This document shows positions 454 through 64,000 of a stretch of 64,000 bases of DNA, one piece after another. A program made the position numbers and the translations under genes. The stretch is taken from the IMG/VR virus record IMGVR_UViG_3300042691_055965, positions 1 through 64,000 of that record; one strand, 5' to 3'. The notes beneath the pieces are model-generated. The model was not told the origin of the DNA and did not search any database. It worked only from the letters and a program-made list of their open reading frames with translations. Positions within the stretch are counted from its first letter, which is position 1; each line of letters opens with the position of its first letter.

Positions 454-1436
454 AAAAAATAAACTTGTACGAAGCACCAATTGCTGACTATTTACCTGAT
501 GAATTCAAACAATACGCAAGACAATCTGCAAAAGAAAGTGAAGAATCAGGAACACCGGCAAACACTATGGAGTTTCAACGACTTATGATGGGGTTACCAT
601 CAATAGAAAGGGAACATAAAAGTGATTTGGTTGAATTGGCTGTAAATTCTTTTTATGAAATGTATCCCGATATTAAAAGTTGGGTTGATAAGGGAAGAAT
701 TGTAGTAGATGCAAATTTAGGTGGAGGTACTGGTGGACGTGTGTTACCTCAAACACCCGCAATGTCGGATATAGAAAAAGCAAAAGAAAAAGATCCTGAC
801 TTTGAAGAGCGTGTAAAAATGAGACATTACCAAAATGCGTTCACACAAGGTAAGGCTTGGGTTAATGGGTTTAATTATATTTTTAAAATTGATAATGAAC
901 TTGAAAATATCGACCCGAAGTTATATGATATGTATCGTTCATTTAGTAAGGGTGCTTCAAAATTCTATTGGGAAAATACAGAAATGCTTGAAAGAATGGC
1001 ACAACAAGCAACAGGTAGAGTTGCTTACTGTGATGTCACATTTTTACCTGATGGTAAAGTGAAAATTGAAGCAAGAGCCCCTGTCTTTCCTTTATTGTTA
1101 CACGAATTGGTAAAAGGTGGTGAATATTATCGTTCATTATTTTCTTTACCTAAAGATAGAGATGTAAGTAAAGCGATTACAAGTACAACCGATGTTCATA
1201 AACATGAAATTAAAAACATGAACTACGGTAGGGCTTTAGTTAATACAATTAGAGAAATTTTAAATAGAAGGGTTAAAGGGTATAGTCCTGATATGGAACC
1301 ACATTTGATGTCAGAATTGGAAGAAACTCTAACACCAAAAGAATTTAATGAAATTATGGATGGGATAGTAAGAAAAGATGAAGATAAAATCTTACGTTTC
1401 ATTATTAAATGTGAAAATATAGTAAAAGAATTATGA
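450..1436 (+). CDS. Phage hypothetical protein
   Basis: 328 aa ORF, ATGA-coupled to both neighbours; LLHELVKG motif, no confident family. Confidence 0.75.
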   Translation: MKKINLYEAPIADYLPDEFKQYARQSAKESEESGTPANTMEFQRLMMGLPSIEREHKSDLVELAVNSFYEMYPDIKSWVDKGRIVVDANLGGGTGGRVLPQTPAMSDIEKAKEKDPDFEERVKMRHYQNAFTQGKAWVNGFNYIFKIDNELENIDPKLYDMYRSFSKGASKFYWENTEMLERMAQQATGRVAYCDVTFLPDGKVKIEARAPVFPLLLHELVKGGEYYRSLFSLPKDRDVSKAITSTTDVHKHEIKNMNYGRALVNTIREILNRRVKGYSPDMEPHLMSELEETLTPKEFNEIMDGIVRKDEDKILRFIIKCENIVKEL

Positions 1437-1717
1437 GAACAAGAATAACTGAATCAGAAATTAATAGAATTGTTAAAAAAATTGTTTTAGAAGACAATCA
1501 ATTCGTTACAGGACCGGCAGCATCAGACAGAACTGAATTAGTTGATGACGTAATTAATAGAATTAATGAATTTGGTGACGAATACATTGCAGCATTAAAT
1601 GAATTAAATGCAGAATATCCTGTAAAACGATACAAACGTATGGAAAGACCTCGTAGAAGTGATTTCGAATTACCAAAAGGGGTTAGAGTACAAAGTTCTT
1701 ATTTTTCAGAAGATTAA
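1433..1717 (+). CDS. Small hypothetical protein with class-A leader
   Basis: 94 aa; starts MRTRITESEINRIVKKIVLE. Confidence 0.7.
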   Translation: MRTRITESEINRIVKKIVLEDNQFVTGPAASDRTELVDDVINRINEFGDEYIAALNELNAEYPVKRYKRMERPRRSDFELPKGVRVQSSYFSED

Positions 1718-3696: not shown

Positions 3697-4245
3697 ATGA
3701 AAATCATTATAACAGAGTCTCAATACCGTTTTTTAGTCGAAAATAGTCAAGAAATAGACAATATATTAGACAAAATGAACGAATTTGGGTATGAAAACCT
3801 TGAAAATGACGAAAAAATGATGTTAAAAGACTATTCTGAATGGTTAAATCAAGGAAAAAAGGGTGATTTTACCCCTAAAAAACACCAAAAAATGGGTGAT
3901 TTTGACGAAAAAATGGGTAAAAAATGGAAAAAACAACTAATGGATGGTAGTGATTTTACCTTTACATTTGACTATTTTGATGTTTTAGATAATGAATATC
4001 TATTCTATGGGTTAGTAAATTGGGATGGTGAAGACTGGTATGGGTTAATTGCTACAGATAATAAGGGTAATTTAACTGAAATTGATTTTATTTCTGAACA
4101 AACAACCTTTAGTACCTATAATTTAGACGACAATGATAGGAATATAAATCAGCAAAAAGAAAAAAGACTACAGGAATCACTAGGGAAACTAATTCATCAA
4201 GTAAAATTCTTTTTCGAAGAAGAAGTTATTCCTGAATTAATGTGA
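3697..4245 (+). CDS. Hypothetical protein, class-A-like leader
   Basis: 182 aa; MKIIITESQYRFLVE; TATTTAT at 3686-3692. Confidence 0.75.
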   Translation: MKIIITESQYRFLVENSQEIDNILDKMNEFGYENLENDEKMMLKDYSEWLNQGKKGDFTPKKHQKMGDFDEKMGKKWKKQLMDGSDFTFTFDYFDVLDNEYLFYGLVNWDGEDWYGLIATDNKGNLTEIDFISEQTTFSTYNLDDNDRNINQQKEKRLQESLGKLIHQVKFFFEEEVIPELM

Positions 4246-4282: not shown

Positions 4283-4687
4283 ATGAAAAAGAAAGTAATT
4301 AGACTTACAGAAAGTGAATTGACAAATTTAATTCAAATTATAGTTGAGGAAGTTCAAATAGAAGAAGGTATTTTTGGACCGAGTGGTATGGAATTAGAAC
4401 AAAGAAAGATTGATTTAATTCGTGCTATTGATGATTTACTTGAAGAATACAACTTAACTGATGATGACTTATATAATAGTGTTGATTCAGTGGTAAAACA
4501 AGCGGCTGAAGACGGTTACGATGGTGAAGTTAAATTGATGCAAGGAAGAAGTGGAAACGTTGTATTAAAATTCATTGCAAATCCTACAAAATTCCAAAAA
4601 AGTAAATTCTACCAAAATGTGGTAAAACCGATGGTTGGTGGAATGAGACAAGGACACGGTTTCGGTTCAGGTAGAGGAGATCTTTAA
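4283..4687 (+). CDS. Hypothetical protein, class-A leader
   Basis: 134 aa; MKKKVIRLTESELTNLIQIIVEE; TATTTAT at 4263-4269. Confidence 0.75.
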   Translation: MKKKVIRLTESELTNLIQIIVEEVQIEEGIFGPSGMELEQRKIDLIRAIDDLLEEYNLTDDDLYNSVDSVVKQAAEDGYDGEVKLMQGRSGNVVLKFIANPTKFQKSKFYQNVVKPMVGGMRQGHGFGSGRGDL

Positions 4688-9071: not shown

Positions 9072-9104
9072 ATAGTTTTAGAAAGATTTGTGATATTTAT
9101 ATGT

Positions 9105-10865: not shown

Positions 10866-12277
10866 AAAAACTATTATTATTCTTAACAACTTTTATTTTT
10901 GTTGTGAATTCTTATTCACAATTAGAGGCGACTTGGGATCAAGGTGTTCCACTTTGTCCTGAAGACAAATACATTTCAGGTTTGATTGATAAGTTGGGGA
11001 ATAAAAATCTAACAGAACTTGATAGTTTAACTGATAACACAAACCTAAAACTTTTCAGAGAAATTGGTTTTGCGTTTTATGACAAAGGTATGTATGATGC
11101 TGCCGATTGGTATCTAAAAAGAGCAAAAAGATACAAAGAAAAAATTATTGTTGAAAAAACAAAAGACAAAGAAGAAACAAAACCAGAAATATCACAAGAA
11201 GATGCCAAACAAATGAAAAAAGATTTGGAGTTTTTAGGAGGTTTACCAAAATCATATGATAATTTATCAAAAGACGATATGTTGGAGTTGGCAAAAATGA
11301 TTAATAATAAAATTAATCAATTAACTAAAGAAAGGGATTCGATACTTAAAAGTGAAAAACCAAATGAAGAATTACTATCATCAAAAAATAACACAATCAA
11401 ATCATTAGAAAAAGAAAAAGAAGTAATTGATTTAACAATTGAAAGTGATGAATTAAAAGGCGAAACTAAAATATTAAACATAGAAAAGGCGACTTTGAAA
11501 AAGTATTTAACAGGATTAATAATTGGTGCATCAGTACTTATTTTATTCATCCTTGTACTTCTTCAAAGAAAAACAATTAGAGTTAAAGATACAGAAATAG
11601 ATAAACAACTAACCGATATCAATAAGAAAAACAAATACTTAGAATATTCAGCAAGAATCATAAGACACGATATGCACTCTGGTATCAATACTTACATTCC
11701 AAGAGGTATATCATCATTAGAAAAAAGAATCACCCAGGAAGATATTGAAAATCTTAAAATTGCTGCACCCATCAAAATGATTAAAGATGGTTTGAGTCAC
11801 ACACAAAAAGTTTACAAAAGAGTTTATGAATTCACAAACCTTGTAAAACAACAAGTGGTATTAGATAAAAAAGAAACGGACACAACAAAACTATTAACAG
11901 ATTACTTCCAATCCACTTCATATAAGAATCAAGTAGAGATTAGCGAATTAGTAATACTTGATATTAACGACACATTATTTTGTAACGCAATAGACAACTT
12001 AGTTAAAAACGGATTACAATATAACGATAGTGAAGACAAATTAGTTAAGATTTATATGGATAAAAATGACTTAATTGTGGAAGATAACGGTAGAGGGTTT
12101 ACACAAAAGGAATTAGAAACGATAACAGGGAAGTATTTAACTAAAAAGGGGGATTCTGAAATTGGTTTGGGATTAAGTATTAGTAAAACCATTTTAGAAG
12201 AACACGGATTTACAATGACTTGTGAAAAAATTAACAATGGAACTAAAATAAAAATTAAGACAAAAAAAGATGATTGA
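10862..12277 (+). CDS. Sensor histidine kinase 2 (signal peptide, TPR-like/coiled-coil periplasmic region, 1 TM)
   Basis: Kinase core paralogous to HK1: IIRHDMHSGINTYIPRG, DNLVKNGLQYN, DNGRG, GLGL. Confidence 0.9.
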   Translation: MKKLLLFLTTFIFVVNSYSQLEATWDQGVPLCPEDKYISGLIDKLGNKNLTELDSLTDNTNLKLFREIGFAFYDKGMYDAADWYLKRAKRYKEKIIVEKTKDKEETKPEISQEDAKQMKKDLEFLGGLPKSYDNLSKDDMLELAKMINNKINQLTKERDSILKSEKPNEELLSSKNNTIKSLEKEKEVIDLTIESDELKGETKILNIEKATLKKYLTGLIIGASVLILFILVLLQRKTIRVKDTEIDKQLTDINKKNKYLEYSARIIRHDMHSGINTYIPRGISSLEKRITQEDIENLKIAAPIKMIKDGLSHTQKVYKRVYEFTNLVKQQVVLDKKETDTTKLLTDYFQSTSYKNQVEISELVILDINDTLFCNAIDNLVKNGLQYNDSEDKLVKIYMDKNDLIVEDNGRGFTQKELETITGKYLTKKGDSEIGLGLSISKTILEEHGFTMTCEKINNGTKIKIKTKKDD

Positions 12278-47996: not shown

Positions 47997-50045
47997 TTAT
48001 TGTGTTTTTATTTTTCTTTTTGTTGGTTTTTTTATTTTAATATCTGTTTTATCTTCTTTTTGATTGTATGATAAAATAAACTTGGAATTTTTTTCTGGGT
48101 TATCAGAAAGGATTTTATCTGTTATATAATCGTCAACCCATTTCTGAACCGTTCTTTTTAAAATCCTTGCTCCAAACCTTGTATCAGTTCCAATTGAAAT
48201 AATATGTTTTTTCAAGGTATCGTCAACCTCAACATCAAATTCAATTTTTCTAACTCTTTCATATACTTTTTCCAATTCCAAATCAATAATTTCCATCAAG
48301 TTATCTTCATCCAAATCTTTGAAATAAACAATATCATCAAATCTATTTATAAATTCTGGAACAAATCTTTTGAAAAGTTCTTTTTCCAACACTGATTTTA
48401 TTTCTTCTTCTTTTTGTTCAATTTTTGTTGCCGTCGAAAATCCTACACCTGTTCCAAATTGTTGAACGGCTCTTGTTCCAACATTTGATGTCATCAATAT
48501 AATACAATTTTTGAAATTGATTTTTCTTCCATGTCCATCGGTTAAAAATCCTTCATCGAGCATTTGCAAAAACACATTGAAGATTTCAGGGTGGGCTTTT
48601 TCAATTTCATCAAGTAAAATAACAGAATATGGTTTGTTTTTAATTTTATTCAAAAAAGGAGAACCATCATCATATCCAACATAACCTGGCGATGTTCCTG
48701 TTAATTTTGATGTTGATATTTTATCTGAAAATTCGCTCATGTCAAGTCTGATAAGAGCATCTTCTGAATTGAACATATGTTTTGCAAGTTGTTTTGCAAG
48801 TTCCGTTTTTCCAACACCGGAATTACCAATTAAAAGTCCACTGAATATCGGTCTTTTTGGATCGTTCAAACCAACTTTATTTCTTTGGATAGCTCTTGCA
48901 ATTTTTGCAATTGCATCATCTTGTCCAATAACCTTTTTATTAAGTGTGTCCTTTAATGTTTTAAGTTGTTCTGATTCATCAGTTGTGATTTTATTGATTG
49001 GAATTTTTGTCATAAGTGACACAACATCATAAACAATATCTTCTGTTACTTCTCTTTTGAAAAGGTTTCTATTTTTTTCAAATTCATCTTTTTCCTTTTC
49101 AAGCTCAAGAAGTATTTTTCTTTCTTTATCTCTTAAATTTGCTGCTTCTTCGTACTTTTGACTATTAATAACTCGAATTTTTTCCTTTTTAATGTCTTCT
49201 GCCTTTTTTTTCAAATCTTCGATAATTTCAGGTAATTTGATTTCAACTTGCGACCTGGCACCAACCTCATCGATTATATCAAACGCCTTGTCAGGAAATT
49301 CTCTATCTGTGATGTAACGATCAGCCAATTCAACACAAAGTTTTAATATGTCATCACTGTACTTTACCTTATGATAATCTTCATACCTTTCTTTTGTATT
49401 ATACAAGATTTCAAGTGTTTCTTCTTTTGTTGACGGATCTACCATTACCTTTTGAAACCTCCTTTCAAGTGCTCCGTCCTTTTCAATGTTTTTTCTATAT
49501 TCTTCAAGTGTTGTTGCTCCAATACATTGTAATTCACCACGGGACAGGGCTGGTTTGAAAATATTTGATGCATCCATTGTACCTGATGCGTTTCCTGCAC
49601 CAATCATTGTATGAATTTCATCGATGAAAATAATAATGTCAGGATTTGCATAAAGTTCTTCCATTATAACTTTCATTCTTTCTTCAAATTGTCCTCTGTA
49701 TTTTGTTCCTGCAACAACAGATGTCATGTCTAATGAAACAATTCTTTTATTTGCCAAATTTTGGGGACAATCACCTTCGAATATTTTCTTTGCAAGTCCT
49801 TCAATAATTGCTGTTTTTCCACAACCAGGTTCACCAAGAACGATTGGGTTGTTCTTTTTTCTTCTTGATAAAATCTGTGCAATTCTATTGATTTCGTTTT
49901 CTCTCCCAACAATCGGGTCTAGTTTTCCTTCTTCTGCTAGTAATATTAAATCTCTTGAAAAATTATCCAAAACGGGGGTTTTTGACGAACCTGTTGATTG
50001 TGATTTGTTTTTGGATTTTTCGTTGCTATCTGCTGAATCAATCAT
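47997..50045 (-). CDS. clpC: ClpC-like double AAA+ ATPase lacking the N-terminal Clp repeat domain
   Basis: Walker A GEPGCGKT and GNSGVGKT; Walker B IFIDEIH and ILLDEIEKAHP; UVR motif YEEAANLRD; GVGF ClpP-docking loop. Confidence 0.9.
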   Translation of the reverse strand: MIDSADSNEKSKNKSQSTGSSKTPVLDNFSRDLILLAEEGKLDPIVGRENEINRIAQILSRRKKNNPIVLGEPGCGKTAIIEGLAKKIFEGDCPQNLANKRIVSLDMTSVVAGTKYRGQFEERMKVIMEELYANPDIIIFIDEIHTMIGAGNASGTMDASNIFKPALSRGELQCIGATTLEEYRKNIEKDGALERRFQKVMVDPSTKEETLEILYNTKERYEDYHKVKYSDDILKLCVELADRYITDREFPDKAFDIIDEVGARSQVEIKLPEIIEDLKKKAEDIKKEKIRVINSQKYEEAANLRDKERKILLELEKEKDEFEKNRNLFKREVTEDIVYDVVSLMTKIPINKITTDESEQLKTLKDTLNKKVIGQDDAIAKIARAIQRNKVGLNDPKRPIFSGLLIGNSGVGKTELAKQLAKHMFNSEDALIRLDMSEFSDKISTSKLTGTSPGYVGYDDGSPFLNKIKNKPYSVILLDEIEKAHPEIFNVFLQMLDEGFLTDGHGRKINFKNCIILMTSNVGTRAVQQFGTGVGFSTATKIEQKEEEIKSVLEKELFKRFVPEFINRFDDIVYFKDLDEDNLMEIIDLELEKVYERVRKIEFDVEVDDTLKKHIISIGTDTRFGARILKRTVQKWVDDYITDKILSDNPEKNSKFILSYNQKEDKTDIKIKKPTKRKIKTQ

Positions 50046-50163
50046 ATTTTTTGTTTTTTTAAAATGTAATTAATTTTTATTCTTTTATCAATTCTTATTT
50101 TTTTGAATATCGGAAATGTTTTTTTCTTTATTGTGCATATTTATTTGGTATAAATAAAAATTT

Positions 50164-50706
50164 ATGAAAAGAATTATAAGACTTACAGAATCAGATTTAG
50201 CTCGTATTGTTAGACGAGTAATTAATGAAGATACTGAAACTACTACTATGACACCAGAAACCGTAACAGATATTACTATGAAAGATGATGTTAAACTTCA
50301 AGAGTATGCTAGTGATGCTCGTGAAGGTATTACCGCACCAAATTCACTAACTATTACGGGTAAGGCTGGTTTAAAAAATGGTGTTGGTACTGTTAATTTT
50401 AACATTACTGGTTCAGGACTCCAAGGAATTAGTAAACGACAGTGTAAAAGAACGAGTGAAGGGTTCAGTATGATAGAAAGTGCTTCTGTAACATTTTCAC
50501 AAAAAAGTGACATAAAATATTATGCCTTCAGTAGATTTTTTACTTACGATGAAACTACTAAATCTTATGTAAGTGATAGAGGTGCCAGTTTAAGAAGCAA
50601 TATTACCGACGGTGGGACAACATTTAAAAATGATAAAAAATTAGCCGAACTGACTTTAAAATACTGTAAAGCGGTGTGTGGTGATGATAAAAATAATTGT
50701 AAATAA
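50164..50706 (+). CDS. Hypothetical protein with class-A leader
   Basis: MKRIIRLTESDLARIVRRVINEDTETTTMTP. Confidence 0.75.
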   Translation: MKRIIRLTESDLARIVRRVINEDTETTTMTPETVTDITMKDDVKLQEYASDAREGITAPNSLTITGKAGLKNGVGTVNFNITGSGLQGISKRQCKRTSEGFSMIESASVTFSQKSDIKYYAFSRFFTYDETTKSYVSDRGASLRSNITDGGTTFKNDKKLAELTLKYCKAVCGDDKNNCK

Positions 50707-50712
50707 AAAGTT

Positions 50713-51213
50713 ATGAAAAGAATAATTAGATTAACAGAATCAGATTTGGCTCGTATTGTTAGACGAGTAATTAGTGAAGGAACTGAAACCACTACTATGA
50801 CTCCGGTAAGTTACACTGAATTAGATTACAATGGGAACATATATAGAGCTATGACTTCTGCAGGTTCACAATTGAAATTCAATGTTGCCCCACGTTATAA
50901 AAAAGTTACTGACAATAAAGGAAACACAACAGAAGATACCAACGTAATAGAATTAACAGTATCTGTTGAGGGTGTTTCAGAAACTTCAGGTAGATTAACA
51001 CTTGATTGTAATAGTAAAACCGCAAAAGGTACATGGAGTTCGGGAATTGTATCTAAAGATGAGAACTTTTGTATAAATGCTGGAAATAGAGGAACTAAAT
51101 GTGGAGCAGAAGCGTCTAGTACGCTTCGATCGTCATTCATACCAGCTGCAAAAGCATGGAAAAATCAAGGTATGGTAGCTGAAATGTTAACTAAATATTG
51201 TAAAAAACCATAA
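50713..51213 (+). CDS. Hypothetical protein with near-identical class-A leader
   Basis: MKRIIRLTESDLARIVRRVISEGTETTTMTP; body diverges from the upstream gene. Confidence 0.75.
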   Translation: MKRIIRLTESDLARIVRRVISEGTETTTMTPVSYTELDYNGNIYRAMTSAGSQLKFNVAPRYKKVTDNKGNTTEDTNVIELTVSVEGVSETSGRLTLDCNSKTAKGTWSSGIVSKDENFCINAGNRGTKCGAEASSTLRSSFIPAAKAWKNQGMVAEMLTKYCKKP

Positions 51214-51227
51214 AACTAAATAAAATG

Positions 51228-51257
51228 AAAAAGGACACCAACGGTGTCCTTTTTTTT
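51228..51257. terminator. Bidirectional intrinsic terminator
   Basis: AAAAAGGACACC-AAC-GGTGTCCTTTTTTTT. Confidence 0.85.
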
Positions 51258-51699
51258 AATTATAAACAATTGTACCGTTGGTGGTATTTGTTACAGTACT
51301 GATAAAGTACATTAAATAGTAAGGTTTAGTTTTATCATTCTTGTTTGTGTTCAAGTGAACAGTACTAACAACTGTTTTTCCTGTTGAAGTTTCTTTGTCA
51401 TTCATTGTAAGAACTACCGTACTCCCTTTTTTGGTGAAAGTAAGTATATCTACACTTTCGGCAAGTGTTCCAAAGTGGTATCTTTTTGCAGTTTTATTAT
51501 CCAAGTCAAAAATATATTTGTTTTTACCTACTAAATTTTTATTGACTGCAACATAATTTGTTGAATCAATTACATTGTCATAACCCCTTAACATACCCGT
51601 ATTAAAAAGCGTAAACTCATCAAATTCAATTTCAATTACTTGTGAAAAAGAAATCATGCTGACTACTGACATTACTAAAGACAAAATCAAATTTTTCAT
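51256..51699 (-). CDS. Secreted beta-rich hypothetical protein
   Basis: Signal peptide MKNLILSLVMSVVSMISFSQ. Confidence 0.7.
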   Translation of the reverse strand: MKNLILSLVMSVVSMISFSQVIEIEFDEFTLFNTGMLRGYDNVIDSTNYVAVNKNLVGKNKYIFDLDNKTAKRYHFGTLAESVDILTFTKKGSTVVLTMNDKETSTGKTVVSTVHLNTNKNDKTKPYYLMYFISTVTNTTNGTIVYN

Positions 51700-51732
51700 A
51701 ACTGTTTTTTTTAAGGGTTTATTTATATACTA

Positions 51733-51740
51733 CAAATATA
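51733..51740 (-). promoter_or_regulatory. Bacteroidota -7 element TATATTTG
   Basis: TAnnTTTG upstream of the ATG at 51699. Confidence 0.55.
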
Positions 51741-51814
51741 TATGATTTATTTTGAATGGCAAAATTTTGCATCAAGTATTTTCGAAAAAAATTAAAATTA
51801 AATATACATAAGAC

Positions 51815-52063
51815 ATGGCAGTAAAAAAAACAACCATTGAAGGAGGTAAAATAATTTGTGAAATTGATTCTTCTAATTTAAAAACCACAGAATATGACAC
51901 AGATACAAAAACACTAGTTGTCGAATTCAACAACGGTTCAAAATATGAATATGAAGAATTTCCTCATGATGTTTATGCGAGGTTTAGATTATCTGAATCA
52001 CAAGGAAAATTTTTTAATTCAGAAATATCCAAAAAATACAAATACAAAAAATTAGAACTTTAA
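51815..52063 (+). CDS. KTSC domain protein
   Basis: DSSNL..EYD..TLVVEF.NGS.YEY..P..Y..F..S.S.GKFFN. Confidence 0.85.
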   Translation: MAVKKTTIEGGKIICEIDSSNLKTTEYDTDTKTLVVEFNNGSKYEYEEFPHDVYARFRLSESQGKFFNSEISKKYKYKKLEL

Positions 52064-52085
52064 TTCTAATGAACTATTTATATTT

Positions 52086-55191: not shown

Positions 55192-56967
55192 ATGGCGTTA
55201 TCAAAAGAACAAGCACTATTAGAATATGCAAAATGTGTAAAGGACACACCCTACGCACTTAAAACATATTTGCAAACTTACGATAACACACAATCAAAAT
55301 ATGTTCCGTTAGAACTGTTTAATGATCAAGTAACACTTGTAAAAGATTACGATGAATGTGAAGAAAACATCGCACTTAAATATCGACAAGCAGGTGTATC
55401 AACAGTAACATCTGCATGGGCTTCCAAAAGACTTGTTTTTGCAAGAAAGGAAAAACCTGAAAAAATTCTTATAATCGCTAACAAATTGGACACGGCAGTC
55501 GAAATGGCAAACAAAGTTCGTGCGTTTGTTGATCAGTGGCCGAAATGGATGGGTGTAACATTTTCAAATGAAAAAAATTCACAAAGACACTTTAAATTAA
55601 CTAATGGGTGTGAAGTGAAGGCGGTTGCAACATCAAAAGATGCACTTCGTGGTTATACACCAACGATACTAATATTTGACGAAGCGGCGTACATTGATGC
55701 CGATGAAGATTTTTGGTCTGCGTGTATGGCGTCTTTATCAACAGGGGGTAAAGTTATTGTAATTTCAACACCAAACGGATTCGACCCAATTTACTACTCT
55801 ATATACAGTCAAGCAATCAAAGGAATGAATGACTTTAGAATAACAGAAATGTATTGGTATCGTGATCCACGATATTCAAAAGATTTAAAACTTATAAAAT
55901 GTGATGACATTGTTCACTATATGCTGAATAGAAGTGATTATAATGATAATGAAATCACATTAGACTATAGTCAAATAAAAGTTAGTGACAGAAATTTTCC
56001 TGAAATAAAAGAAAAAATTGAAAATGGTTATAAGGCATATAGTTCTTGGTTCGAGGCTATGGCTAAAAAACTTAAATTCGATAAGAGAAAAATTTCACAG
56101 GAATTAGAATGTAACTTTTTAGGTTCAGGGGATAATGTAATCCCACCTGAAACTATGAAAAAAATAAAAGAAAACCATATCAAAGAACCTGAAAATAAAT
56201 TTATGGGTGGTGCTCTTTGGCAATGGAAAGAACCAATTGCAGGACACCGATATATTATGGGTGTTGATGTATCAAGAGGTGATAGTGAAGATTTTAGTAC
56301 AATATCAGTGATTGATTTTGACAATAGGGAACAAGTATTAGAATACATGGGAAAAATTCCACCTGATGTACTTGCAGAAATCGCATATAAATGGGGAACT
56401 ATGTATAACGCCTTTATTGTTACCGATATAACGGGGGGTATGGGTGTTTCTACATCAAGAAAACTACAAGAACTAGGATATAGAAATTTATATGTTGATG
56501 GAGTAAATCCAGCAGATAAATGGAAGTGGAACCCTAAGGCACAAGATAAAATACCGGGAATTAATTTTAATGCAAAAAGAGTTTTAATTATACAAGCGTT
56601 TGAAGAAGCGTTAAGATATGACTTTTCTTTAAAATCACAAAGATTATTTAATGAACTAAATACGTTTGTATATGTGAATGGTAGACCTGATCACCAAAAA
56701 GGACAACATGATGACTTAATTATGTCTTTTGCAATGGCGATATATGTTGCTGAAACTTCTTTTGCACAATTGGAAAAAGCAACAGAACAAACTAAGGCAA
56801 TGATTGAATCTTGGCAAGTTGAATCAAAGGTTCATGCCGATCCAACAAGAAGTTTTAATCCAGGTATACCTGTTGATGTTTATGGTATGAACAATTTCCC
56901 AAAAAGTGGACCGACTAAAAGTGACTATGAAAACTATTTATGGTTATTCGGTAAAGGAAGGGTTTAG
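55192..56967 (+). CDS. terL: Terminase large subunit (T4 gp17-like)
   Basis: KYRQAGVST Walker A, ILIFDEAA Walker B, VISTPNG, nuclease GVDVSRG and HDDLIM. Confidence 0.95.
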   Translation: MALSKEQALLEYAKCVKDTPYALKTYLQTYDNTQSKYVPLELFNDQVTLVKDYDECEENIALKYRQAGVSTVTSAWASKRLVFARKEKPEKILIIANKLDTAVEMANKVRAFVDQWPKWMGVTFSNEKNSQRHFKLTNGCEVKAVATSKDALRGYTPTILIFDEAAYIDADEDFWSACMASLSTGGKVIVISTPNGFDPIYYSIYSQAIKGMNDFRITEMYWYRDPRYSKDLKLIKCDDIVHYMLNRSDYNDNEITLDYSQIKVSDRNFPEIKEKIENGYKAYSSWFEAMAKKLKFDKRKISQELECNFLGSGDNVIPPETMKKIKENHIKEPENKFMGGALWQWKEPIAGHRYIMGVDVSRGDSEDFSTISVIDFDNREQVLEYMGKIPPDVLAEIAYKWGTMYNAFIVTDITGGMGVSTSRKLQELGYRNLYVDGVNPADKWKWNPKAQDKIPGINFNAKRVLIIQAFEEALRYDFSLKSQRLFNELNTFVYVNGRPDHQKGQHDDLIMSFAMAIYVAETSFAQLEKATEQTKAMIESWQVESKVHADPTRSFNPGIPVDVYGMNNFPKSGPTKSDYENYLWLFGKGRV

Positions 56968-57007: not shown

Positions 57008-58807
57008 ATGGCACAAGACAAATATACAATATGGCAAAGGTTGAGTAAGACATTCGGTCCAAGTGCTACACTCGATCAACAATCACCCGTATTCAAGTTC
57101 GATAAAAAAGAACTATTAAAAACAACAGATAAACAAGAATATGAAGTTGAAAAACTTCAAGCACAACAAACTGTTTATTTGGGTAAACAATGGCAAAAGG
57201 TTGAATCTAACCTTTACCAACAAGCAGTATATTATGAACCAACAAGAATGGCTTCATATTATGACTATGAATCAATGGAATATACACCTGAAATATCGGC
57301 AGCTCTTGATGTTTATGCTGAAGAATCTACAACACCCGATAAAGATGGTGATATATTAAAAGTTTATTCTGAATCAAAAAGAATTAAATCTGTTTTGACT
57401 GATTTATTTGTCACCAGAATGGATATTAATACAAATCTCCCAATGTGGACAAGAAACACTTGTAAATTTGGTGACAACTTTATTTATTTGAAATTGGATC
57501 CAGAAAAAGGTGTTGTAGGATGTCAACAATTACCGAATATCCAAATTGAAAGATTGGAAAAAGGGATGCGTTTTCAACCTGACAAGTATTCACAAGAAAT
57601 GGAAAACGATGCATTGAAGTTTGTATGGAAAGAAAAAAACATGGAATTCAATCTTTGGGAAGTAGGACATTTCAGAATATTAGGTGATGACAGAAAACTT
57701 CCTTACGGAACATCTATGTTAGAAAAAGCAAGAAGAATTTGGAAACAATTATTACTTTCTGAAGATGCTATGTTAATATACAGGGTGTCAAGAGCACCTG
57801 AAAGAAGAGTGTTTAAGGTATTTGTTGGAAACATGGATGATAAAGATGTTGACCCATATGTACAAAGAGTTGCAAACAAATTCAAACGAGATCAGATTGC
57901 TGATCCCAAAACAGGTAACGTTGATATGAGGTACAATCAGTTGGCAGTCGATCAAGACTTCTTTATTCCTGTTAGAGATCCGGCACAAACAAACCCAATA
58001 GAGACATTACCTGGTGGTACAAACTTGGCGGAAATCGCAGATATTGAATATATCCAAAAGAAATTGGTTACCGCACTTCGTGTACCAAAGGCTTATTTAG
58101 GTTTTGAAGAAGCGGTGGGTGATGGTAAAAACTTATCATTACTTGATATTAGATTTGCAAGAACAATCAATAGAATCCAAAAATCAATGTTGGCGGAATT
58201 GAATAAAATTGCGATTATACATTTATTTTTGTTAGGGTTTGAAGATGAATTAACAAATTTCAGTCTTGGACTTCACAACCCATCCAAACAAGCAGATTTA
58301 CTTGGTGTGGAAGTATGGAAAGAAAAAATTACGTTATACAAAGACGCTGTTGCACCGATTCAAGATTCAGTTGCTCCTGTTTCAGCGTCATGGGCTAAGA
58401 AACACATACTTGGATTTAGTGATGAAGAAATTAGACTTGACTTACAACAACAGAGGGTTGAAAGAGCGGTTGCTGCTGAACTTGGTAAAACTGCAGAAGT
58501 TATTACTAAAACAGGATTATTTGATAATATCGATAATTTATATGGTAAAAAGGATTCTGAACCTGCAGGGGCACCTGCTGAAGGTGGAGGAATGCCTCCT
58601 GAACCAGGAGGTGGGGCACCTCCACCACCGAGTGAACCACCAGCAGGTGGTGAAGCCGCAGTAACACCTGAAAGATTTGTTAAAGATGGGTTAGATTTGA
58701 TACTAGAAGAAACGTTATTTTATGGAAATGATACACTAGATTTGTCCAAAGGAAAAAATTCTCTTGTAGAAATAAATGAAAAACTTAACGATTTAATCAA
58801 CAAGTAA
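57008..58807 (+). CDS. Portal protein (T4 gp20-like)
   Basis: YGTSMLEKARRIWKQL.L.EDAMLIYRVSRAPERRVF, ETLPGG.NL.EIADIEY..KKL..AL.VP. Confidence 0.95.
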   Translation: MAQDKYTIWQRLSKTFGPSATLDQQSPVFKFDKKELLKTTDKQEYEVEKLQAQQTVYLGKQWQKVESNLYQQAVYYEPTRMASYYDYESMEYTPEISAALDVYAEESTTPDKDGDILKVYSESKRIKSVLTDLFVTRMDINTNLPMWTRNTCKFGDNFIYLKLDPEKGVVGCQQLPNIQIERLEKGMRFQPDKYSQEMENDALKFVWKEKNMEFNLWEVGHFRILGDDRKLPYGTSMLEKARRIWKQLLLSEDAMLIYRVSRAPERRVFKVFVGNMDDKDVDPYVQRVANKFKRDQIADPKTGNVDMRYNQLAVDQDFFIPVRDPAQTNPIETLPGGTNLAEIADIEYIQKKLVTALRVPKAYLGFEEAVGDGKNLSLLDIRFARTINRIQKSMLAELNKIAIIHLFLLGFEDELTNFSLGLHNPSKQADLLGVEVWKEKITLYKDAVAPIQDSVAPVSASWAKKHILGFSDEEIRLDLQQQRVERAVAAELGKTAEVITKTGLFDNIDNLYGKKDSEPAGAPAEGGGMPPEPGGGAPPPPSEPPAGGEAAVTPERFVKDGLDLILEETLFYGNDTLDLSKGKNSLVEINEKLNDLINK

Positions 58808-59795: not shown

Positions 59796-59978
59796 TTAGT
59801 TCTTGTTTTTTTGAATATGAATAGCCTTATTTTTCTGTGAGCGTTTTTTCACTGAAGGTTTTACATATTCTTGCCTATTTTTCAAAATTTCATTTTGCTT
59901 TGTTCTATAAACTTTAAATTTATAGGTTTTCAAAGCGCTTTCAATAGAATTCGCATTCTTTACTTCTACTATAATCAT
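59796..59978 (-). CDS. rpsU: Ribosomal protein bS21
   Basis: SIESALKTYK..EILKNRQEYVKPSVKKR matches the S21 pattern; minus-strand TATTTAT at 59998-60004. Confidence 0.85.
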   Translation of the reverse strand: MIIVEVKNANSIESALKTYKFKVYRTKQNEILKNRQEYVKPSVKKRSQKNKAIHIQKNKN

Positions 59979-60556: not shown

Positions 60557-61264
60557 ATGAAAATATTAGGACCTAGTGATATTGGTAAAGGGATTTTAAT
60601 TGAACACGACGCAGGATTAATCAGTTTAAATGATGTAAGAAATAATAAAACAATAAATGAATCCTACGGACAATTAGATTATTCTAAACCATTTGTATTT
60701 TATGCGACACTACAAAAATACGGTGTACCAAACAGAAACGGAAGGGTATACCCTGAAAAAATATTGAAAAGAGAAGCCGAAAAGTACAAAGAAATGATTA
60801 ATAAAGGGATGTCAATTTCGGAATTAAATCACCCTGAATCATCTTTAATTGATTTGGACAGAGTTTCACATTTAATAACAGATGTATGGTGGGAAGGTAA
60901 CGTACTTATGGGTAAAATTAAATTACTTACAACACCAGGATTCCATGAAAGAGGTATTGTATCGTCTAAAGGCGATATTGCAGCAAACATGATGAGACAA
61001 GGGGTTACTATGGGTGTGTCTTCGCGTGGGGTTGGTTCATTGGTTAAGAAAGGTGAACAAAATGAAGTGCAAGAAGATTTTGAACTAATATGTTTCGACT
61101 TGGTATCTTCACCTTCTACACCTGGAGCATATCTATACTTAAATAAAGAAGATAGACCTAAATATGAAGAAAAACTTACAGAGCATGAAAATGTAAATTC
61201 TTTTGGCGGTTTAGAAAAATCAGTTGACTTAATGAAAAGATTATCCGATTATTTGGGTAAATAA
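60557..61264 (+). CDS. Prohead core protease (T4 gp21-like)
   Basis: NRNGRVYP, ELNHP, VSH, GVSSRGVGS, FDLVSSPSTPGA. Confidence 0.95.
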   Translation: MKILGPSDIGKGILIEHDAGLISLNDVRNNKTINESYGQLDYSKPFVFYATLQKYGVPNRNGRVYPEKILKREAEKYKEMINKGMSISELNHPESSLIDLDRVSHLITDVWWEGNVLMGKIKLLTTPGFHERGIVSSKGDIAANMMRQGVTMGVSSRGVGSLVKKGEQNEVQEDFELICFDLVSSPSTPGAYLYLNKEDRPKYEEKLTEHENVNSFGGLEKSVDLMKRLSDYLGK

Positions 61265-61582: not shown

Positions 61583-61879
61583 ATGAAAAAAATTAACCGT
61601 CTGACTGAAAGAGATTTAACACGAATTGTTAAACGTGTAATCAAAGAAGAAGAAGATGATAATAAAAAGGAAAGTAAAGGAATGTCTATAACAATAAAGG
61701 ATGTGTTTGATGAAGTTGTTAACGCACTTAAGGAGTTAGGGGATTACGATGACTCGATGAAAGGAAAAGCAATGAAATTGGCTAAAAAAATTATGTCTAA
61801 TTTCAAAGATGATTTGGCTTATATTTCTGATAACCACGAGGACGAATTATACGATATTCTTGGTGAAGAAAATTATTGA
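61583..61879 (+). CDS. Small protein with class-A leader
   Basis: MKKINRLTERDLTRIVKRVIKEE; TATTTAT at 61546-61552. Confidence 0.75.
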   Translation: MKKINRLTERDLTRIVKRVIKEEEDDNKKESKGMSITIKDVFDEVVNALKELGDYDDSMKGKAMKLAKKIMSNFKDDLAYISDNHEDELYDILGEENY

Positions 61880-61997: not shown

Positions 61998-62032
61998 TTG
62001 GTAAATAAACGCATAATGTATTGCATTTAAAA

Positions 62033-63580
62033 ATGGGAATAAATGAAAATAAATCGGTAGTTGAAGAGGCTTTATTACAAATAAAGAACCTTGAAGACGC
62101 TATCAATGAAAACGCAAAAGGAATACTTGCTTCAACTATGAAGGAAGAAATCAGTGAATTAGTAAAAGAATCATTAGGTGGTTACAAAAAAAATCTACGG
62201 GAACAAGACGCTCCTGAAGAACCAGAAGGTGAAGAAGAAGTTGATGTTGACTTAGAAGACGAAACGGAAGTTGAACCTGAAGGTGAGGAAATTGACTTTT
62301 CTGCGGTAGAAAAATTTAATGAACCGCAAGGTGATGAAGAAGTAGGCGATTTTTCCGACCTAGAAGAACCTATGATGGGTGATAATGAAACGGGTAATGA
62401 AATGCCACCACTTGATATGACATCAGCTTCCCCTGAAGAAATTTTGAAAGTATTCAAAGCGATGGGTGATGAAGATGGAATCATTGTTAAAAAAGACGAT
62501 GATTATATCCATTTGTCAGATAATCAAAAGGATGTTGAATATCTTATAAGTGTTGGTGATGAACCCGAAGAAACAGAAGAAACTCAAATGGCAGAAAATG
62601 TGATATATGAGTTAGAAGTTGAAGAATCAGAAAACATGGACTTTAATTTGTTTATGGACGAAGAAGAAGAATTTGAAGGTATGTACATGGACGAAGAAGA
62701 AGAATTTGAAGGTATGTACATGGACGAAGAAGAAGAATTTGAAGGTATGTACATGGACGAAGAAGAAGAACAAGAAGAAACAGTTTATGAAATCGATGAA
62801 GAAGATTTGGAATCCGTAATGGAGGCATTCAAAGCTGTTGGACTTGGTTTTGGAAAACCGATGAAAACTTTTTCTAAAATGGAAGTAAACGACAAAGGAT
62901 TCAAGGATGATAAAAAACAAGGTGAAAATCTGAAAAGAAAAGGTCCGAAGTTTAAATATCCAAAAATCAAACATGGTGTTACTGAAATGGAAGATAAAGA
63001 AATGGATGAAGAATGGAATGAAGAAGAATACAACGAAGGAATGGATTACCATGAAGAAGAAGCAGAAACAAAAGAAGCTGCTAGAACATATGGTAAAGGT
63101 TCTAAACGTGGTAGAGGCTTAAGAAAAGGGGTCACTCCAAACAGAAACTTAGTTTACGGTGAAAACGGTGTTCATTCTGAATCAGTACAAAATGAAATCA
63201 ATGTTTTAAGAGAAAAAAATGAAGAGTACAAAAAGGCTCTTGACTTCTTTAGAAACAAATTGAATGAAGTTGCTGTATTTAATTCCAATTTGGCGTATTC
63301 AACAAGATTGTTCACTGAACATTCAACTACTAAACAAGAAAAGATTAACATTCTTAGAAGATTTGACGAAGTCGATACTTTGAAAGAATCAAAATCTTTG
63401 TACAAAACAATTAAAACAGAATTAGATGGAAAAGGTTCATCTAATACAATAAAAGAATCTATCGAAAGACGAGTTGTTAAAACACCATCTAATGGTTCAT
63501 CAACAAATCTAATCGAAAGTAAAACGTATGAAAATCCACAATTCTTAAGAATGAAGGATTTGATGACAAAAATAAAATAA
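62033..63580 (+). CDS. Prohead scaffold/core protein (T4 gp22-like)
   Basis: Highly acidic with coiled-coil C-half; located between protease and MCP; likely ATG at 62033. Confidence 0.8.
   Translation: MGINENKSVVEEALLQIKNLEDAINENAKGILASTMKEEISELVKESLGGYKKNLREQDAPEEPEGEEEVDVDLEDETEVEPEGEEIDFSAVEKFNEPQGDEEVGDFSDLEEPMMGDNETGNEMPPLDMTSASPEEILKVFKAMGDEDGIIVKKDDDYIHLSDNQKDVEYLISVGDEPEETEETQMAENVIYELEVEESENMDFNLFMDEEEEFEGMYMDEEEEFEGMYMDEEEEFEGMYMDEEEEQEETVYEIDEEDLESVMEAFKAVGLGFGKPMKTFSKMEVNDKGFKDDKKQGENLKRKGPKFKYPKIKHGVTEMEDKEMDEEWNEEEYNEGMDYHEEEAETKEAARTYGKGSKRGRGLRKGVTPNRNLVYGENGVHSESVQNEINVLREKNEEYKKALDFFRNKLNEVAVFNSNLAYSTRLFTEHSTTKQEKINILRRFDEVDTLKESKSLYKTIKTELDGKGSSNTIKESIERRVVKTPSNGSSTNLIESKTYENPQFLRMKDLMTKIK
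62654..62770 (+). repeat. Perfect 33-bp tandem repeat x3.5 (MDEEEEFEGMY)
   Basis: ATGGACGAAGAAGAAGAATTTGAAGGTATGTAC repeated in frame. Confidence 0.95.
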
Positions 63581-63613: not shown

Positions 63614-64000
63614 ATGGGAGCATTATTAGAATCAGGTCTTGTTGGTAACATCGGTCTTAAGCACCTTAAAGTTATCAAAGAAGATACAATTAACAAATGG
63701 GATAAATTAGGATTCCTAGACGGTCTTAAAGGACACATCAAAGAGAACATGGCACAATTATATGAAAACCAAGCGTCTCACCTAATTAACGAAGCCGCGT
63801 CAACTGATAGTTCAGGTTCTTTCGAAACTGTAGTTTTCCCTATCGTTCGTCGTGTATTCTCTAAATTGTTGGCTAACGACATCGTTTCTGTACAAGCAAT
63901 GAACTTACCTATTGGTAAATTGTTCTACTTCGTACCTAAAATCCAAGGTTACACAACTGCAAATCCTACCACAAGTGCAATTCACAACCAACCAATTGGT
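63614..64000 (+). CDS. Major capsid protein (T4 gp23-like), 5' partial
   Basis: Hand-translated MGALLESG..KWDKLGFL..QLYENQ..LINEAAS..VFPIVRRVFSKLLANDIVSVQAMNLPIGKLFYF; runs off the window. Confidence 0.95.
   Translation, partial: MGALLESGLVGNIGLKHLKVIKEDTINKWDKLGFLDGLKGHIKENMAQLYENQASHLINEAASTDSSGSFETVVFPIVRRVFSKLLANDIVSVQAMNLPIGKLFYFVPKIQGYTTANPTTSAIHNQPIG

What the first reader, a model, noticed from the sequence alone, without database searches (positions are those of the whole stretch)
50164..51213. Class-A leader behaves as a portable ~90-bp cassette on different bodies
Seen: two adjacent genes share nearly identical first ~31 codons (MKRIIRLTESDLARIVRRVIxExTETTTMTP) and then diverge, apart from a Cys-containing L.KYC end. 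The same [LI]TE[SR][DE][LI]xx[IL][VI] leader occurs at 1433, 4283 and 61583, and more weakly at 3697 and 26018. Inference: a targeting module recombined onto variable cargo, giving a quick route to new virion-delivered effectors.
Basis: partly seen in the sequence, partly recalled or inferred. Interest (0 to 1): 0.65.

Follow-up and report, generated by a model that had tools for sequence, protein, structure and literature searches.

The report
Shared N-terminal tag on phage proteins
An uncultured huge freshwater phage, and its whole clade, puts the same 22-residue N-terminal tag on dozens of otherwise unrelated small proteins; the tag ends in the cutting motif of the phage's own T4-type head protease, so it is most likely a "pack me into the capsid" signal like the one on T4 internal proteins, though this has not been tested.

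Summary
Genes A (50164-50706) and B (50713-51213) share 29 of their first 31 residues and a KYC end. A leader profile finds 11 members in the 229-kb genome, all at the N-terminus of + strand ORFs. These include 1433, 3697, 4283 and 61583, but not 26018. The conserved unit is residues 1-22: a basic start, an L-T-E-S-D-L helix cap and an amphipathic helix ending V-I-x-E. Conservation stops right after that Glu.

The leader is widespread and modular. It occurs 214 times in 120 IMG/VR loci and 16-22 times per complete relative genome. The same DNA pattern has no match in 596 Gb of bacterial genomes. It sits on 102 BLAST-unrelated bodies, almost all ORFans. Synonymous codons vary freely, so selection acts on the peptide.

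The genome is a T4-like, bS21-encoding huge phage of Bacteroidota. It encodes a gp21-type (S77) prohead protease, and its capsid protein carries L-I-N-E at the expected maturation site.

Best explanation (about 0.5): a T4-CTS-like prohead-targeting propeptide that this protease removes. A and B themselves are tandem paralogues, not different bodies, and their leaders share more recent DNA ancestry than their bodies do. Virion association and cleavage are untested, because no cultured relative carries the leader.

The parts
50164..50706 (+). Gene A, 180 aa. Leader is codons 1-22 (50164-50229), ending V-I-N-E. A family linker (codons 23-31, 50230-50256) follows, then a beta-rich body and a C-terminal helix with KYC.
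   Evidence: 32.3 bits; AF2 pLDDT 75: helix 9-24, strands, two C-terminal helices. In one search, metagenome contigs diverge at 50162 and at 50229-50231.
50713..51213 (+). Gene B, 166 aa, tandem paralogue of A. Leader is codons 1-22 (50713-50778), ending V-I-S-E; linker is 50779-50805. Its body belongs to a metagenomic family of about 165 aa with an invariant Cys and a Y-C end.
   Evidence: AF2 pLDDT 78, pTM 0.69.
50137..50144 (+). ATATTTAT, a candidate promoter-like motif 27 nt upstream of gene A. The same motif precedes the protease, scaffold, bS21 and tail-like genes.
   Evidence: within 80 nt upstream of 7/11 leader genes against 35/214 other genes (Fisher p = 9e-4). Function is inferred only.
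1433..1717 (+). Leader-bearing ORF, 94 aa. Leader ends I-V-L-E; acidic ORFan body.
   Evidence: (24.0 bits).
3697..4245 (+). Leader-bearing ORF, 182 aa, with the variant leader 'MKIIITESQY...' and L-V-E at residue 14. Residues 15-48 match DUF6576.
   Evidence: (27.4 bits).
4283..4687 (+). Leader-bearing ORF, 134 aa. Leader ends I-V-E-E.
   Evidence: (23.8 bits).
61583..61879 (+). Leader-bearing ORF, 98 aa, acidic and helical. Leader ends V-I-K-E. It is an extra gene inserted in the head module between the protease operon and the scaffold gene, and is absent at this position in relatives.
   Evidence: (28.0 bits).
60557..61264 (+). Prohead maturation protease of the T4 gp21 family (Peptidase_S77); the proposed enzyme that removes the leader.
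   Evidence: PF03420, 84 bits, E 9.5e-25; phrog_207, E 2.8e-45.
62021..63580 (+). Acidic 519-aa protein (27% D+E, 19 [LIV]-x-E sites) in the position of the T4 gp22 scaffold, conserved next to the protease operon in relatives. Proposed docking partner of the leader (inferred).
   Evidence: It has no Pfam or PHROG match.
63614..64000 (+). 5' part of the gp23-type major capsid protein gene, which runs to 65425 of the genome. The propeptide is invariant in relatives up to L-I-N-E60 and variable right after; I-K-E44 lies where T4's cut extrapolates.
   Evidence: E 4e-25 to T4 gp23 structures.

Best explanation
The class-A leader is a 22-residue N-terminal targeting propeptide. It is analogous to the capsid targeting sequence (CTS) of T4 internal proteins but unrelated to it in sequence.

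Proposed mechanism:
- A short basic strand, a T-x-x-D/E helix cap and an amphipathic helix dock the newly made protein onto the prohead core. The likely partner is the acidic scaffold encoded at 62021-63580.
- After shell assembly, the gp21-type protease (60557-61264) cuts after the invariant Glu of V/I-I/L-x-E.
- The freed cargo stays in the head and is delivered with the DNA.

Because any ORF that acquires the tag becomes packaged, the clade has accumulated 16-22 tagged genes per genome. They carry more than 100 unrelated, fast-evolving bodies, often in tandem arrays.

Genes A and B are two tandem paralogues of one such cargo family. Their leaders, plus about 15 nt upstream and the 9-codon linker, have been kept alike or homogenised while the bodies diverged beyond recognition.

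Shown: the module, its boundaries, its distribution, peptide-level selection, the presence of the protease and the motif match. Inferred: docking, cleavage, packaging and ejection.
For: 1. The leader is always N-terminal. All 11 genome members, 214 of 222 motif matches in IMG/VR loci, and nearly all of the profile hits listed for five genomes start at or within a few positions of the profile's Met.
2. Its length (14-22 aa) is in the range of T4 propeptides, which are 10-20 aa (PMC5694885).
3. Conservation is near-absolute to position 16 of the motif and collapses right after it. In the 76 members not forced by my search pattern, that position is Glu in 60. Positions -3 and -2 are V/I/L and position -1 is free (K, N, S, R, E). 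This is the L/I-x-E logic of gp21 (PMC9026906).
4. Metagenome contigs that share only the leader break away at the ATG and right after codon 22.
5. A Peptidase_S77 gene lies in the same genome and in 8 of 9 near-complete leader-bearing relatives.
6. The surest substrate of that protease, the gp23-type capsid protein, has L-I-N-E60 followed by Ala, where conservation among relatives ends.
7. Cargo is diverse: 160 unique bodies form 102 clusters, with a median length of 129 aa, and about 97% are ORFans. A few are enzymes or binders (thioredoxin, LysM, PG_binding_1, a 748-aa SET-domain protein). This mirrors T4, where 'only a conserved CTS' unites diverse internal proteins (PMC3012670).
8. Synonymous codons are saturated between non-adjacent leaders, so the constraint is on the peptide.
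9. The leader is phage-only: the same pattern has 0 matches in 596 Gb of bacterial and archaeal genomes.
10. A promoter-like motif is shared with head and tail genes.
11. Paralogues with identical N-termini and 34% overall identity are reported for processed head proteins gp53/gp54 of SPN3US. A and B are also 34% identical.
Against: There is no direct evidence that any leader protein is in a virion or is cut.
- No RNA run holds the locus.
- The closest cultured phages (Flavobacterium phage immuto, Microcystis phage Mel-JY01) lack the leader (with a positive control), so no proteomics applies.
- [LIV]-x-E is a short motif and common by chance, at about 2 per 100 residues.
- All leader-bearing contigs seem to belong to one clade. 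Co-occurrence with S77 may therefore only reflect shared ancestry.
- One near-complete relative (G002) showed no S77 match.
- The two 'MKIIITESQY' variants lack Glu at motif position 16; they have L-V-E or I-K-E a few residues earlier.
- 16-22 tagged genes per genome is far more than T4's handful.
- The leader is not similar to the T4 CTS beyond its last residues (my own knowledge of the T4 sequence, not tested with a tool).
Confidence: 0.5

Rival explanations
1. The leader is a common docking helix for a partner outside the virion and is not removed by the head protease. Possible partners include the phage's own ClpA/B-like unfoldase (47997-50045, divergently adjacent to gene A), a host protein, or a co-assembly of all tagged proteins in the cell.
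For: The leader is a strand, helix cap and amphipathic helix with low-confidence packing on the body (pLDDT about 60), as expected of a module that binds something else. A Clp-type ATPase is encoded next to A and B, and ClpA is a core gene in a published aquatic huge-phage lineage. Nothing here shows cleavage.
Against: This does not explain why conservation ends exactly at a Glu preceded by V/I-I/L-x with a free x, nor why the capsid protein's predicted cut site has the same four residues. Other leader genes are not near the Clp gene. The shared upstream motif groups leader genes with structural genes.
Confidence: 0.2
2. There is no targeting function. All tagged proteins are one old, fast-evolving superfamily made by serial tandem duplication, and the N-terminus is simply its most constrained structural element.
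For: A and B are tandem paralogues whose middles have diverged beyond detection (11% identity), yet they remain colinear with cysteines in register. Arrays of up to ten tagged genes occur in relatives. ORFan phage proteins diverge fast.
Against: Bodies range from 79 to 748 aa. They include unrelated known folds (thioredoxin, LysM, PG_binding_1, SET) as well as beta-rich and all-helical ORFans, and these cannot all be homologous. The leader is separated from the body by a flexible linker and is not part of the body fold. The boundary is sharp and identical across families.
Confidence: 0.15
3. The conserved unit acts at the nucleic-acid level, for example as a translation-initiation region suited to bS21-modified ribosomes, a regulatory RNA or a recombination site. 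On this reading the peptide is incidental.
For: The phage encodes bS21, which is thought to bias translation initiation. The A-rich start region and about 15 nt upstream are conserved between A and B.
Against: Across 156 distinct leader DNAs, Leu, Arg, Ser, Thr, Val and Ile codons vary freely while the residues stay fixed. Non-adjacent leaders in the same genome are at synonymous saturation: 7/15 same codons against 0.48 expected.
Confidence: 0.03
4. The leader is an export signal (Sec, Tat, lipoprotein or T9SS).
For: Some cargo binds peptidoglycan (LysM, PG_binding_1). The genome also encodes T9SS-type CHU_C proteins.
Against: The leader has 8 charged residues in 22 and no hydrophobic core, as the sequence shows directly. 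T9SS signals are C-terminal. Genuine signal peptides in this genome look quite different, for example the ORF at 51256-51699.
Confidence: 0.02

Closest known systems
Capsid targeting sequence (CTS) of bacteriophage T4 internal proteins IPI, IPII and IPIII, and the propeptides of Alt and gp24
   Same: Both are short N-terminal propeptide-like tags and the only conserved part of otherwise diverse small proteins. Both end in hydrophobic-x-Glu, the motif of the gp21-family protease encoded by the same phage. Cargo genes are small, variable and clustered, with occasional large enzymes (T4 Alt; here a 748-aa SET-domain protein). Sources: PMC3012670, PMC9026906, PMC5694885.
   Different: There is no sequence similarity to the T4 CTS beyond the last residues (own knowledge of the T4 sequence). 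The tag is longer (22 aa against 10) and has a distinct helix-cap box. The repertoire is far larger (16-22 genes per genome, more than 100 cargo families). The host phylum is Bacteroidota. Packaging, cleavage and ejection are proven in T4 and untested here.
Processed head and ejection proteins of giant phages phiKZ, 201phi2-1 and SPN3US (e.g. SPN3US gp53/gp54)
   Same: In both, diverged paralogues (34% identity) keep identical N-termini. The protease is a distant gp21 homologue that cuts after Glu. Many head-internal proteins are involved.
   Different: Their motif is S/A-x-E and their propeptides are mostly longer than 100 residues. Here the -3 position is V/I/L as in T4, and the tag is 22 residues. 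This phage is T4-like, with gp20-type portal, gp23-type capsid and S77 protease, and is not phiKZ-like.
Published bS21-encoding huge phages of Bacteroidota (Chen et al. 2022, PMC9723584), and possibly the aquatic 'moraphages' (PMC12619734)
   Same: The window has the defining layout: bS21 on the reverse strand inside the TerL-portal-protease-MCP block. It also shares the freshwater origin and a size class up to about 300 kb in relatives.
   Different: Those papers do not mention any shared N-terminal leader, propeptide or internal-protein family. The leader family is a new feature of a known clade.

Membership tests
T4-type CTS / internal-protein system | A short N-terminal sequence (10-20 aa) shared by otherwise unrelated proteins | tested here: met
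   There are 11 members in the genome. In IMG/VR loci there are 214 N-terminal copies on 102 unrelated body clusters.
T4-type CTS / internal-protein system | The tag ends in the prohead protease motif L/I-x-E | tested here: met
   The tag ends V/I-I/L-x-E. Glu is present in 60/76 pattern-independent members, the x position is free, and conservation stops after Glu. This holds at sequence level only.
T4-type CTS / internal-protein system | A gp21-family (Peptidase_S77) prohead protease is encoded by the same phage | tested here: met
   Window 60557-61264 matches PF03420 at 84 bits. The family is present in 8/9 near-complete leader-bearing relatives.
T4-type CTS / internal-protein system | The tag is cleaved off during head maturation | not testable with these tools
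   This needs N-terminal mass spectrometry of particles or an in vitro protease assay. The complex-prediction job gave no verdict.
T4-type CTS / internal-protein system | The tagged proteins are in the prohead core or mature head and are ejected into the host | not testable with these tools
   No cultured phage carries the leader, and no RNA or proteome data are available.
T4-type CTS / internal-protein system | Sequence homology to the T4 CTS itself | not tested
   The T4 CTS sequence was not returned by any tool. From my own knowledge there is no similarity beyond hydrophobic-x-Glu. I therefore treat this as an analogue, not a homologue.
phiKZ/SPN3US-type head-protein propeptides | Cleavage motif S/A-x-E and propeptides mostly longer than 100 residues | tested here: not met
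   Position -3 is V/I/L, not S/A, and the tag is 14-22 residues (motif from PMC9026906 and PMC5694885).
Sec/Tat/lipoprotein signal peptides | An uncharged hydrophobic core after a basic N-region | tested here: not met
   Direct reading shows 8 charged residues of 22 and no run of 7 or more hydrophobic residues.
Simple tandem duplication (genes A and B) | Homology over the full length | tested here: inconclusive
   Homology is shown for residues 1-31 and the last ~47 columns (hhalign E 1e-4, prob 53%). The two proteins are colinear, with both invariant cysteines in register. The middle (~100 residues) is 11% identical, which is random level. The predicted folds have the same order of elements, but A was folded with B's family alignment.
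bS21-encoding huge phages of Bacteroidota | bS21 on the reverse strand within the TerL/portal/protease/MCP block | tested here: met
   PF01165 matches at 59820-59969 (-), between the portal-side ORF and the protease. The layout follows PMC9723584.

The most novel reading that the evidence does not exclude
A whole clade of uncultured huge freshwater phages of Bacteroidota uses a previously undescribed 22-residue capsid-targeting propeptide to load 16-22 different proteins per genome into the head. These come from more than 100 families, including peptidoglycan binders, a thioredoxin and a SET-domain enzyme. That would be by far the largest known repertoire of CTS-tagged ejected proteins. The tag spreads between genes by recombination or gene conversion. 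It would define a searchable catalogue of candidate injected host-takeover and anti-defence proteins for a phylum where none are known.
Probability: 0.4. Interest if true: 0.75.

Novelty: new variant of a known kind. Interest (0 to 1): 0.6.

Why it matters
If the tag is a capsid-targeting propeptide, one short sequence signature identifies the proteins these abundant but uncultured phages inject with their DNA. In T4, that class includes anti-restriction and host-modifying proteins. The signature would turn hundreds of ORFans into a defined functional class. It would also extend the T4 CTS principle to a distant branch with a different tag, and show how a small portable module lets phages recruit new cargo quickly. 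The claim is directly testable: look for peptides beginning right after Glu22 in viral-fraction proteomes from the lakes where these phages occur.

Tried and rejected
- Pfam and PHROGs scans of the six window members found no family.
- blastn and tblastn of the locus and of gene A against cultured phages found no match.
- I first took ORF 61583 for the scaffold because it follows the protease. I rejected this: relatives lack it at that place, and the conserved acidic 519-aa protein is the scaffold candidate.
- I tested the T4 late promoter TATAAATA seen upstream of gene A. It has only 25 + 61 copies genome-wide, and it was absent from most of the leader-gene and head-gene upstream regions I printed, so I dropped it in favour of ATATTTAT, which is itself only suggestive.
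- Complex prediction on the protease plus residues 1-45 of A gave no verdict (score 0.00). This is not evidence either way.
- Fold searches of B's model found nothing significant. The best Foldseek E was 0.09. The best VIA Z was 5.3 (H. influenzae protein E; the UDG inhibitor Ugi), below the tool's stated noise level of 7-8.
- A protein atlas search with the leader gave no usable feature hit, and structural rows for a 24-residue helix are meaningless.
- Leader profile search in Flavobacterium phage immuto and Microcystis phage Mel-JY01: none.
- Sequencing-run search: no RNA runs.
- Literature: no paper contains the string LTESDL.
- No other genetic code was used.

Full report
**1.

- ORFs 50164-50706 (gene A, 180 aa) and 50713-51213 (gene B, 166 aa) lie head to tail on the + strand.
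- Their first 31 residues are 29/31 identical, the rest aligns poorly, and both end in ...KYC.
- The strict leader motif occurs five times in the six-frame translation of the window, at 1433, 4283, 50164, 50713 and 61583. Each match is at residues 5-8 of a + strand ORF.
- Shuffles of the window give 0.035 matches.

**2. What the genome is**

- The window is the first 64 kb of a single 229,188-bp viral contig with 31% GC. CheckV puts it at 76% complete.
- It has a T4-type head module:
  - large terminase at 55192-56967,
  - gp20-type portal at 57008-58807,
  - Peptidase_S77 (gp21-type) prohead protease at 60557-61264,
  - an acidic scaffold-like protein at 62021-63580,
  - a gp23-type major capsid protein at 63614-65425.
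- A ribosomal protein bS21 gene sits on the reverse strand inside this module, at 59820-59969. This is the signature of the published bS21-encoding huge phages of Bacteroidota (PMC9723584).
- The closest cultured phages are distant: Microcystis phage Mel-JY01, the Flavobacterium 'immuto' phages and Rhodothermus RM378.
- The locus recurs in freshwater metagenomes from many studies.

**3. The family in this genome**

- A profile of the leader separates 11 ORFs (22.6-32.3 bits) from everything else (12.5 bits or less).
  - In the window: 1433, 3697, 4283, 50164, 50713 and 61583.
  - Beyond the window: 216449 (748 aa, with a SET domain and a weak DHH match), 220442, 224204, 225823 and 227134.
- All are on the + strand and all carry the leader at the very N-terminus.
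- 3697 and 216449 carry a variant ('MKIIITESQY...').
It seems to belong to a different N-terminal motif class, shared with 223734.
- A shorter form, containing only the second half of the leader, sits at the N-terminus of four larger ORFs (72588, 73622, 201077, 211804). This half-motif is 44-fold enriched in the first 25 residues of proteins: 11 of 14 occurrences, p = 2e-10.

**4. Anatomy and boundaries of the leader**

- The consensus is Met, a basic-hydrophobic stretch, L-T-E-S-D-L (a helix N-cap box), then an amphipathic helix R-I-V-R-R-V-I-x-E.
- In 214 N-terminal copies from IMG/VR, every position up to the Glu is 75-100% conserved except two free positions. One of these is the residue just before the Glu. 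The next residue onward is unconserved.
- In the 76 copies not constrained by my DNA search pattern, the Glu is present in 60 and the two residues before the free position are V/I/L.
- AF2 models of A and B show an isolated helix at residues 9-24, a low-confidence linker, and then the body.
- Independent support comes from laying metagenome contigs on the locus.
  - Many contigs match only the two leader segments.
  - They run on as unlike sequence with loose ends at 50162 (just before the ATG) and 50229-50231 (just after codon 22).
  - The bodies are matched only by the phage's own contigs.
- Selection is on the peptide. Across 156 distinct leader DNAs, synonymous codons vary freely. Between non-adjacent leaders in this genome, codon identity is at saturation: 7/15, against 0.48 expected.

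**5. Distribution**

Many lie on 270-305 kb contigs.
- The same pattern has 0 matches in 596 Gb of bacterial and archaeal genomes.
- The leader profile finds 13 hits in this incomplete genome and 16-22 in each of four complete relatives, with arrays of up to ten genes.
- It finds none in phage immuto or Mel-JY01.
- The leader is therefore a hallmark of one uncultured clade.

**6. Cargo**

- 160 unique bodies of 40 aa or more fall into 102 BLAST-unrelated clusters. The median protein is 129 aa, and cluster representatives range from 79 to 505 aa.
- Pfam recognises almost nothing:
  - one thioredoxin, one LysM and two DUFs among the 102 representatives;
  - one PG_binding_1 among ten large members from relatives;
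  - SET plus weak DHH in the 748-aa member here.
- Mature bodies in this genome are either acidic (pI 4.1-4.8) or basic (8.3-8.9).

**7. Genes A and B are paralogues, not two different bodies**

- B's body belongs to a coherent metagenomic family of about 165 aa. The family has a conserved linker after the leader, an invariant mid-protein Cys and a C-terminal helix ending Y-C.
- A's body matches that family's profile only over the last ~47 columns (hhalign E 1e-4).
- Even so, A aligns colinearly with both cysteines in register. It is also predicted to have the same order of strands and two terminal helices, with the caveat that A was folded using B's family alignment.
- I conclude they are tandem paralogues.
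- Their histories are nevertheless uneven along the gene.
  - In the leader, 16 of 20 identical degenerate residues use the same codon. The expectation is 0.48, giving p = 0.0035.
  - The middle of the body is at random level: 11% amino-acid and 38% nucleotide identity.
  - So either the leader region (about -15 to +93) has been homogenised or transplanted by recombination, or the bodies evolved under extreme diversifying selection.
- Some contigs in related populations join 49982 or 49984 directly to 51815 or 52075. This suggests the A-B block is a variable insert, with the usual caveat for metagenome joints.

**8. Most likely mechanism**

- In T4, the gp21 protease cuts after L/I-x-E. A 10-20-residue N-terminal CTS targets internal proteins to the scaffolding core and is then removed. 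The CTS is the only conserved part of an otherwise diverse set of internal proteins.
- The leader here reproduces that logic:
  - it is N-terminal and of similar length;
  - it ends in V/I-I/L-x-E with a free x;
  - the boundary right after the Glu is sharp;
  - a gp21-family protease is encoded in the same genome and in 8 of 9 near-complete relatives;
  - the cargo is diverse, small and clustered.
- The capsid protein is the surest substrate of such a protease. Its propeptide is invariant among relatives up to L-I-N-E60 followed by Ala, and variable immediately after. T4's own cut extrapolates to I-K-E44 by ungapped alignment.
- A motif, ATATTTAT, lies 12-52 nt upstream of 7/11 leader genes. 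It also precedes the protease, scaffold, bS21, sheath-like and tube-like genes. Only 35/214 other genes have it (p = 9e-4). This hints at co-expression with structural genes.
- Peptidoglycan-binding cargo without any export signal would make sense for proteins that leave the capsid during infection.
- All steps after 'the motif is there' are inference: docking to the scaffold, cleavage, packaging and ejection. I put this explanation at about 0.5.

**9. Rivals**

- A docking helix for a non-virion partner, such as the adjacent ClpA/B-like ATPase, is possible (0.2). It does not explain the protease-like end of the tag.
- One fast-diverging superfamily without any targeting role (0.15) conflicts with the unrelated known domains found behind the same tag.
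- A nucleic-acid-level element (0.03) is contradicted by synonymous variation.
- An export signal (0.02) is contradicted by the charged, non-hydrophobic sequence.

**10. Relation to known systems and novelty**

- This works like the T4 CTS / internal-protein system and resembles the identical N-termini of SPN3US gp53/gp54.
- It is not a sequence homologue of the T4 CTS (own knowledge). It also fails the S/A-x-E and long-propeptide features of phiKZ-type phages.
- No paper in the library contains the motif. The two papers on these aquatic huge-phage lineages do not mention any shared leader.
- I rate it a new variant of a known kind: a new tag, a new clade and an unusually large repertoire, with function still to be shown.

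**11. Dead ends**

These are listed under Tried and rejected. Notably, the protease-leader complex job returned no verdict, and B's fold has no significant match in the PDB.

Noticed in passing
window 59820-59969 (-): A ribosomal protein bS21 gene lies on the reverse strand inside the head module (PF01165, E 3.9e-10). This places the genome in the published clade of bS21-encoding huge phages of Bacteroidota.
   Followed up: yes
window 47997-50045 (-): A 682-aa ClpA/ClpB-like double-AAA+ ATPase (phrog_4871, E 3e-222) is divergently adjacent to gene A. Its D2-small region contains a leader-like 'L-[ST]-x-x-[DE]-L..I[VI]' stretch, which my loose regex also picked up in a relative (L044).
   Followed up: partly
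window 26018-28435 (+) and genome 223734-224201 (+): A second N-terminal motif class ('..[FI][TI]ISE[QE]EK..IL..') is shared by an 805-aa protein with a CarboxypepD_reg-like domain and a 155-aa ORFan. It is distinct from the class-A leader and not detected by its profile.
   Followed up: partly
genome 72588-73307 (+), 73622-74083 (-), 201077-202174 (+), 211804-212976 (+): Four larger ORFans start with a short leader ('M..NNIIKKV[LV]xE') that equals only the second half of the class-A leader and also ends in hydrophobic-x-Glu. The half-motif is 44-fold enriched at N-termini.
   Followed up: partly
genome 216449-218695 (+) (L002:6449-8692): A 748-aa protein with the variant leader carries a SET (protein methyltransferase) domain (E 8e-9) and a weak DHH match. 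It may be a large tagged enzyme in the manner of T4 Alt.
   Followed up: partly
window 62021-63580 (+): The scaffold-like protein contains three tandem copies of an 11-residue acidic unit ('MDEEEEFEGMY') around residues 213-245 and is 27% Asp+Glu.
   Followed up: no
window 6775-8985 (+), 9090-12277 (+); genome 65628-72545 (+): Host-like genes sit inside the phage contig. These are a SprB-repeat/CHU_C (T9SS signal) protein, two GAF/PAS/HATPase histidine-kinase-like ORFs, and a run of five ORFs with Sec-type signal peptides after the capsid gene. This may be why IMG/VR labels the record 'provirus'.
   Followed up: no
window 49982-52075: In two metagenomes, contigs join 49982 or 49984 directly to 51815 or 52075, skipping genes A and B and the minus-strand ORF 51256-51699. 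The block may be a variable insert in the population. Metagenome joints at 80% likeness are uncertain.
   Followed up: partly
G007 (IMG/VR relative), L124/L139 and L137: One 'complete' 269-kb relative has two S77 protease genes and two gp23-like capsid genes. The second pair is much more divergent (41% identity in the capsid N-terminus). It could be a second head-gene set or a chimeric assembly.
   Followed up: no
proteins P0012 and P0018 (metagenomic): P0012 (255 aa) carries two full leaders in one reading frame, the second at residue 139. It looks like two tandem genes fused. P0018 has a second, partial leader copy near residue 95. Internal copies are rare (8 of 222 motif matches).
   Followed up: no
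window 3697-4245 (+): Residues 15-48 of this variant-leader protein match Pfam DUF6576 above its cut-off (E 7e-8, 32.9 bits). This is the only curated-family hit among the window's six members.
   Followed up: no
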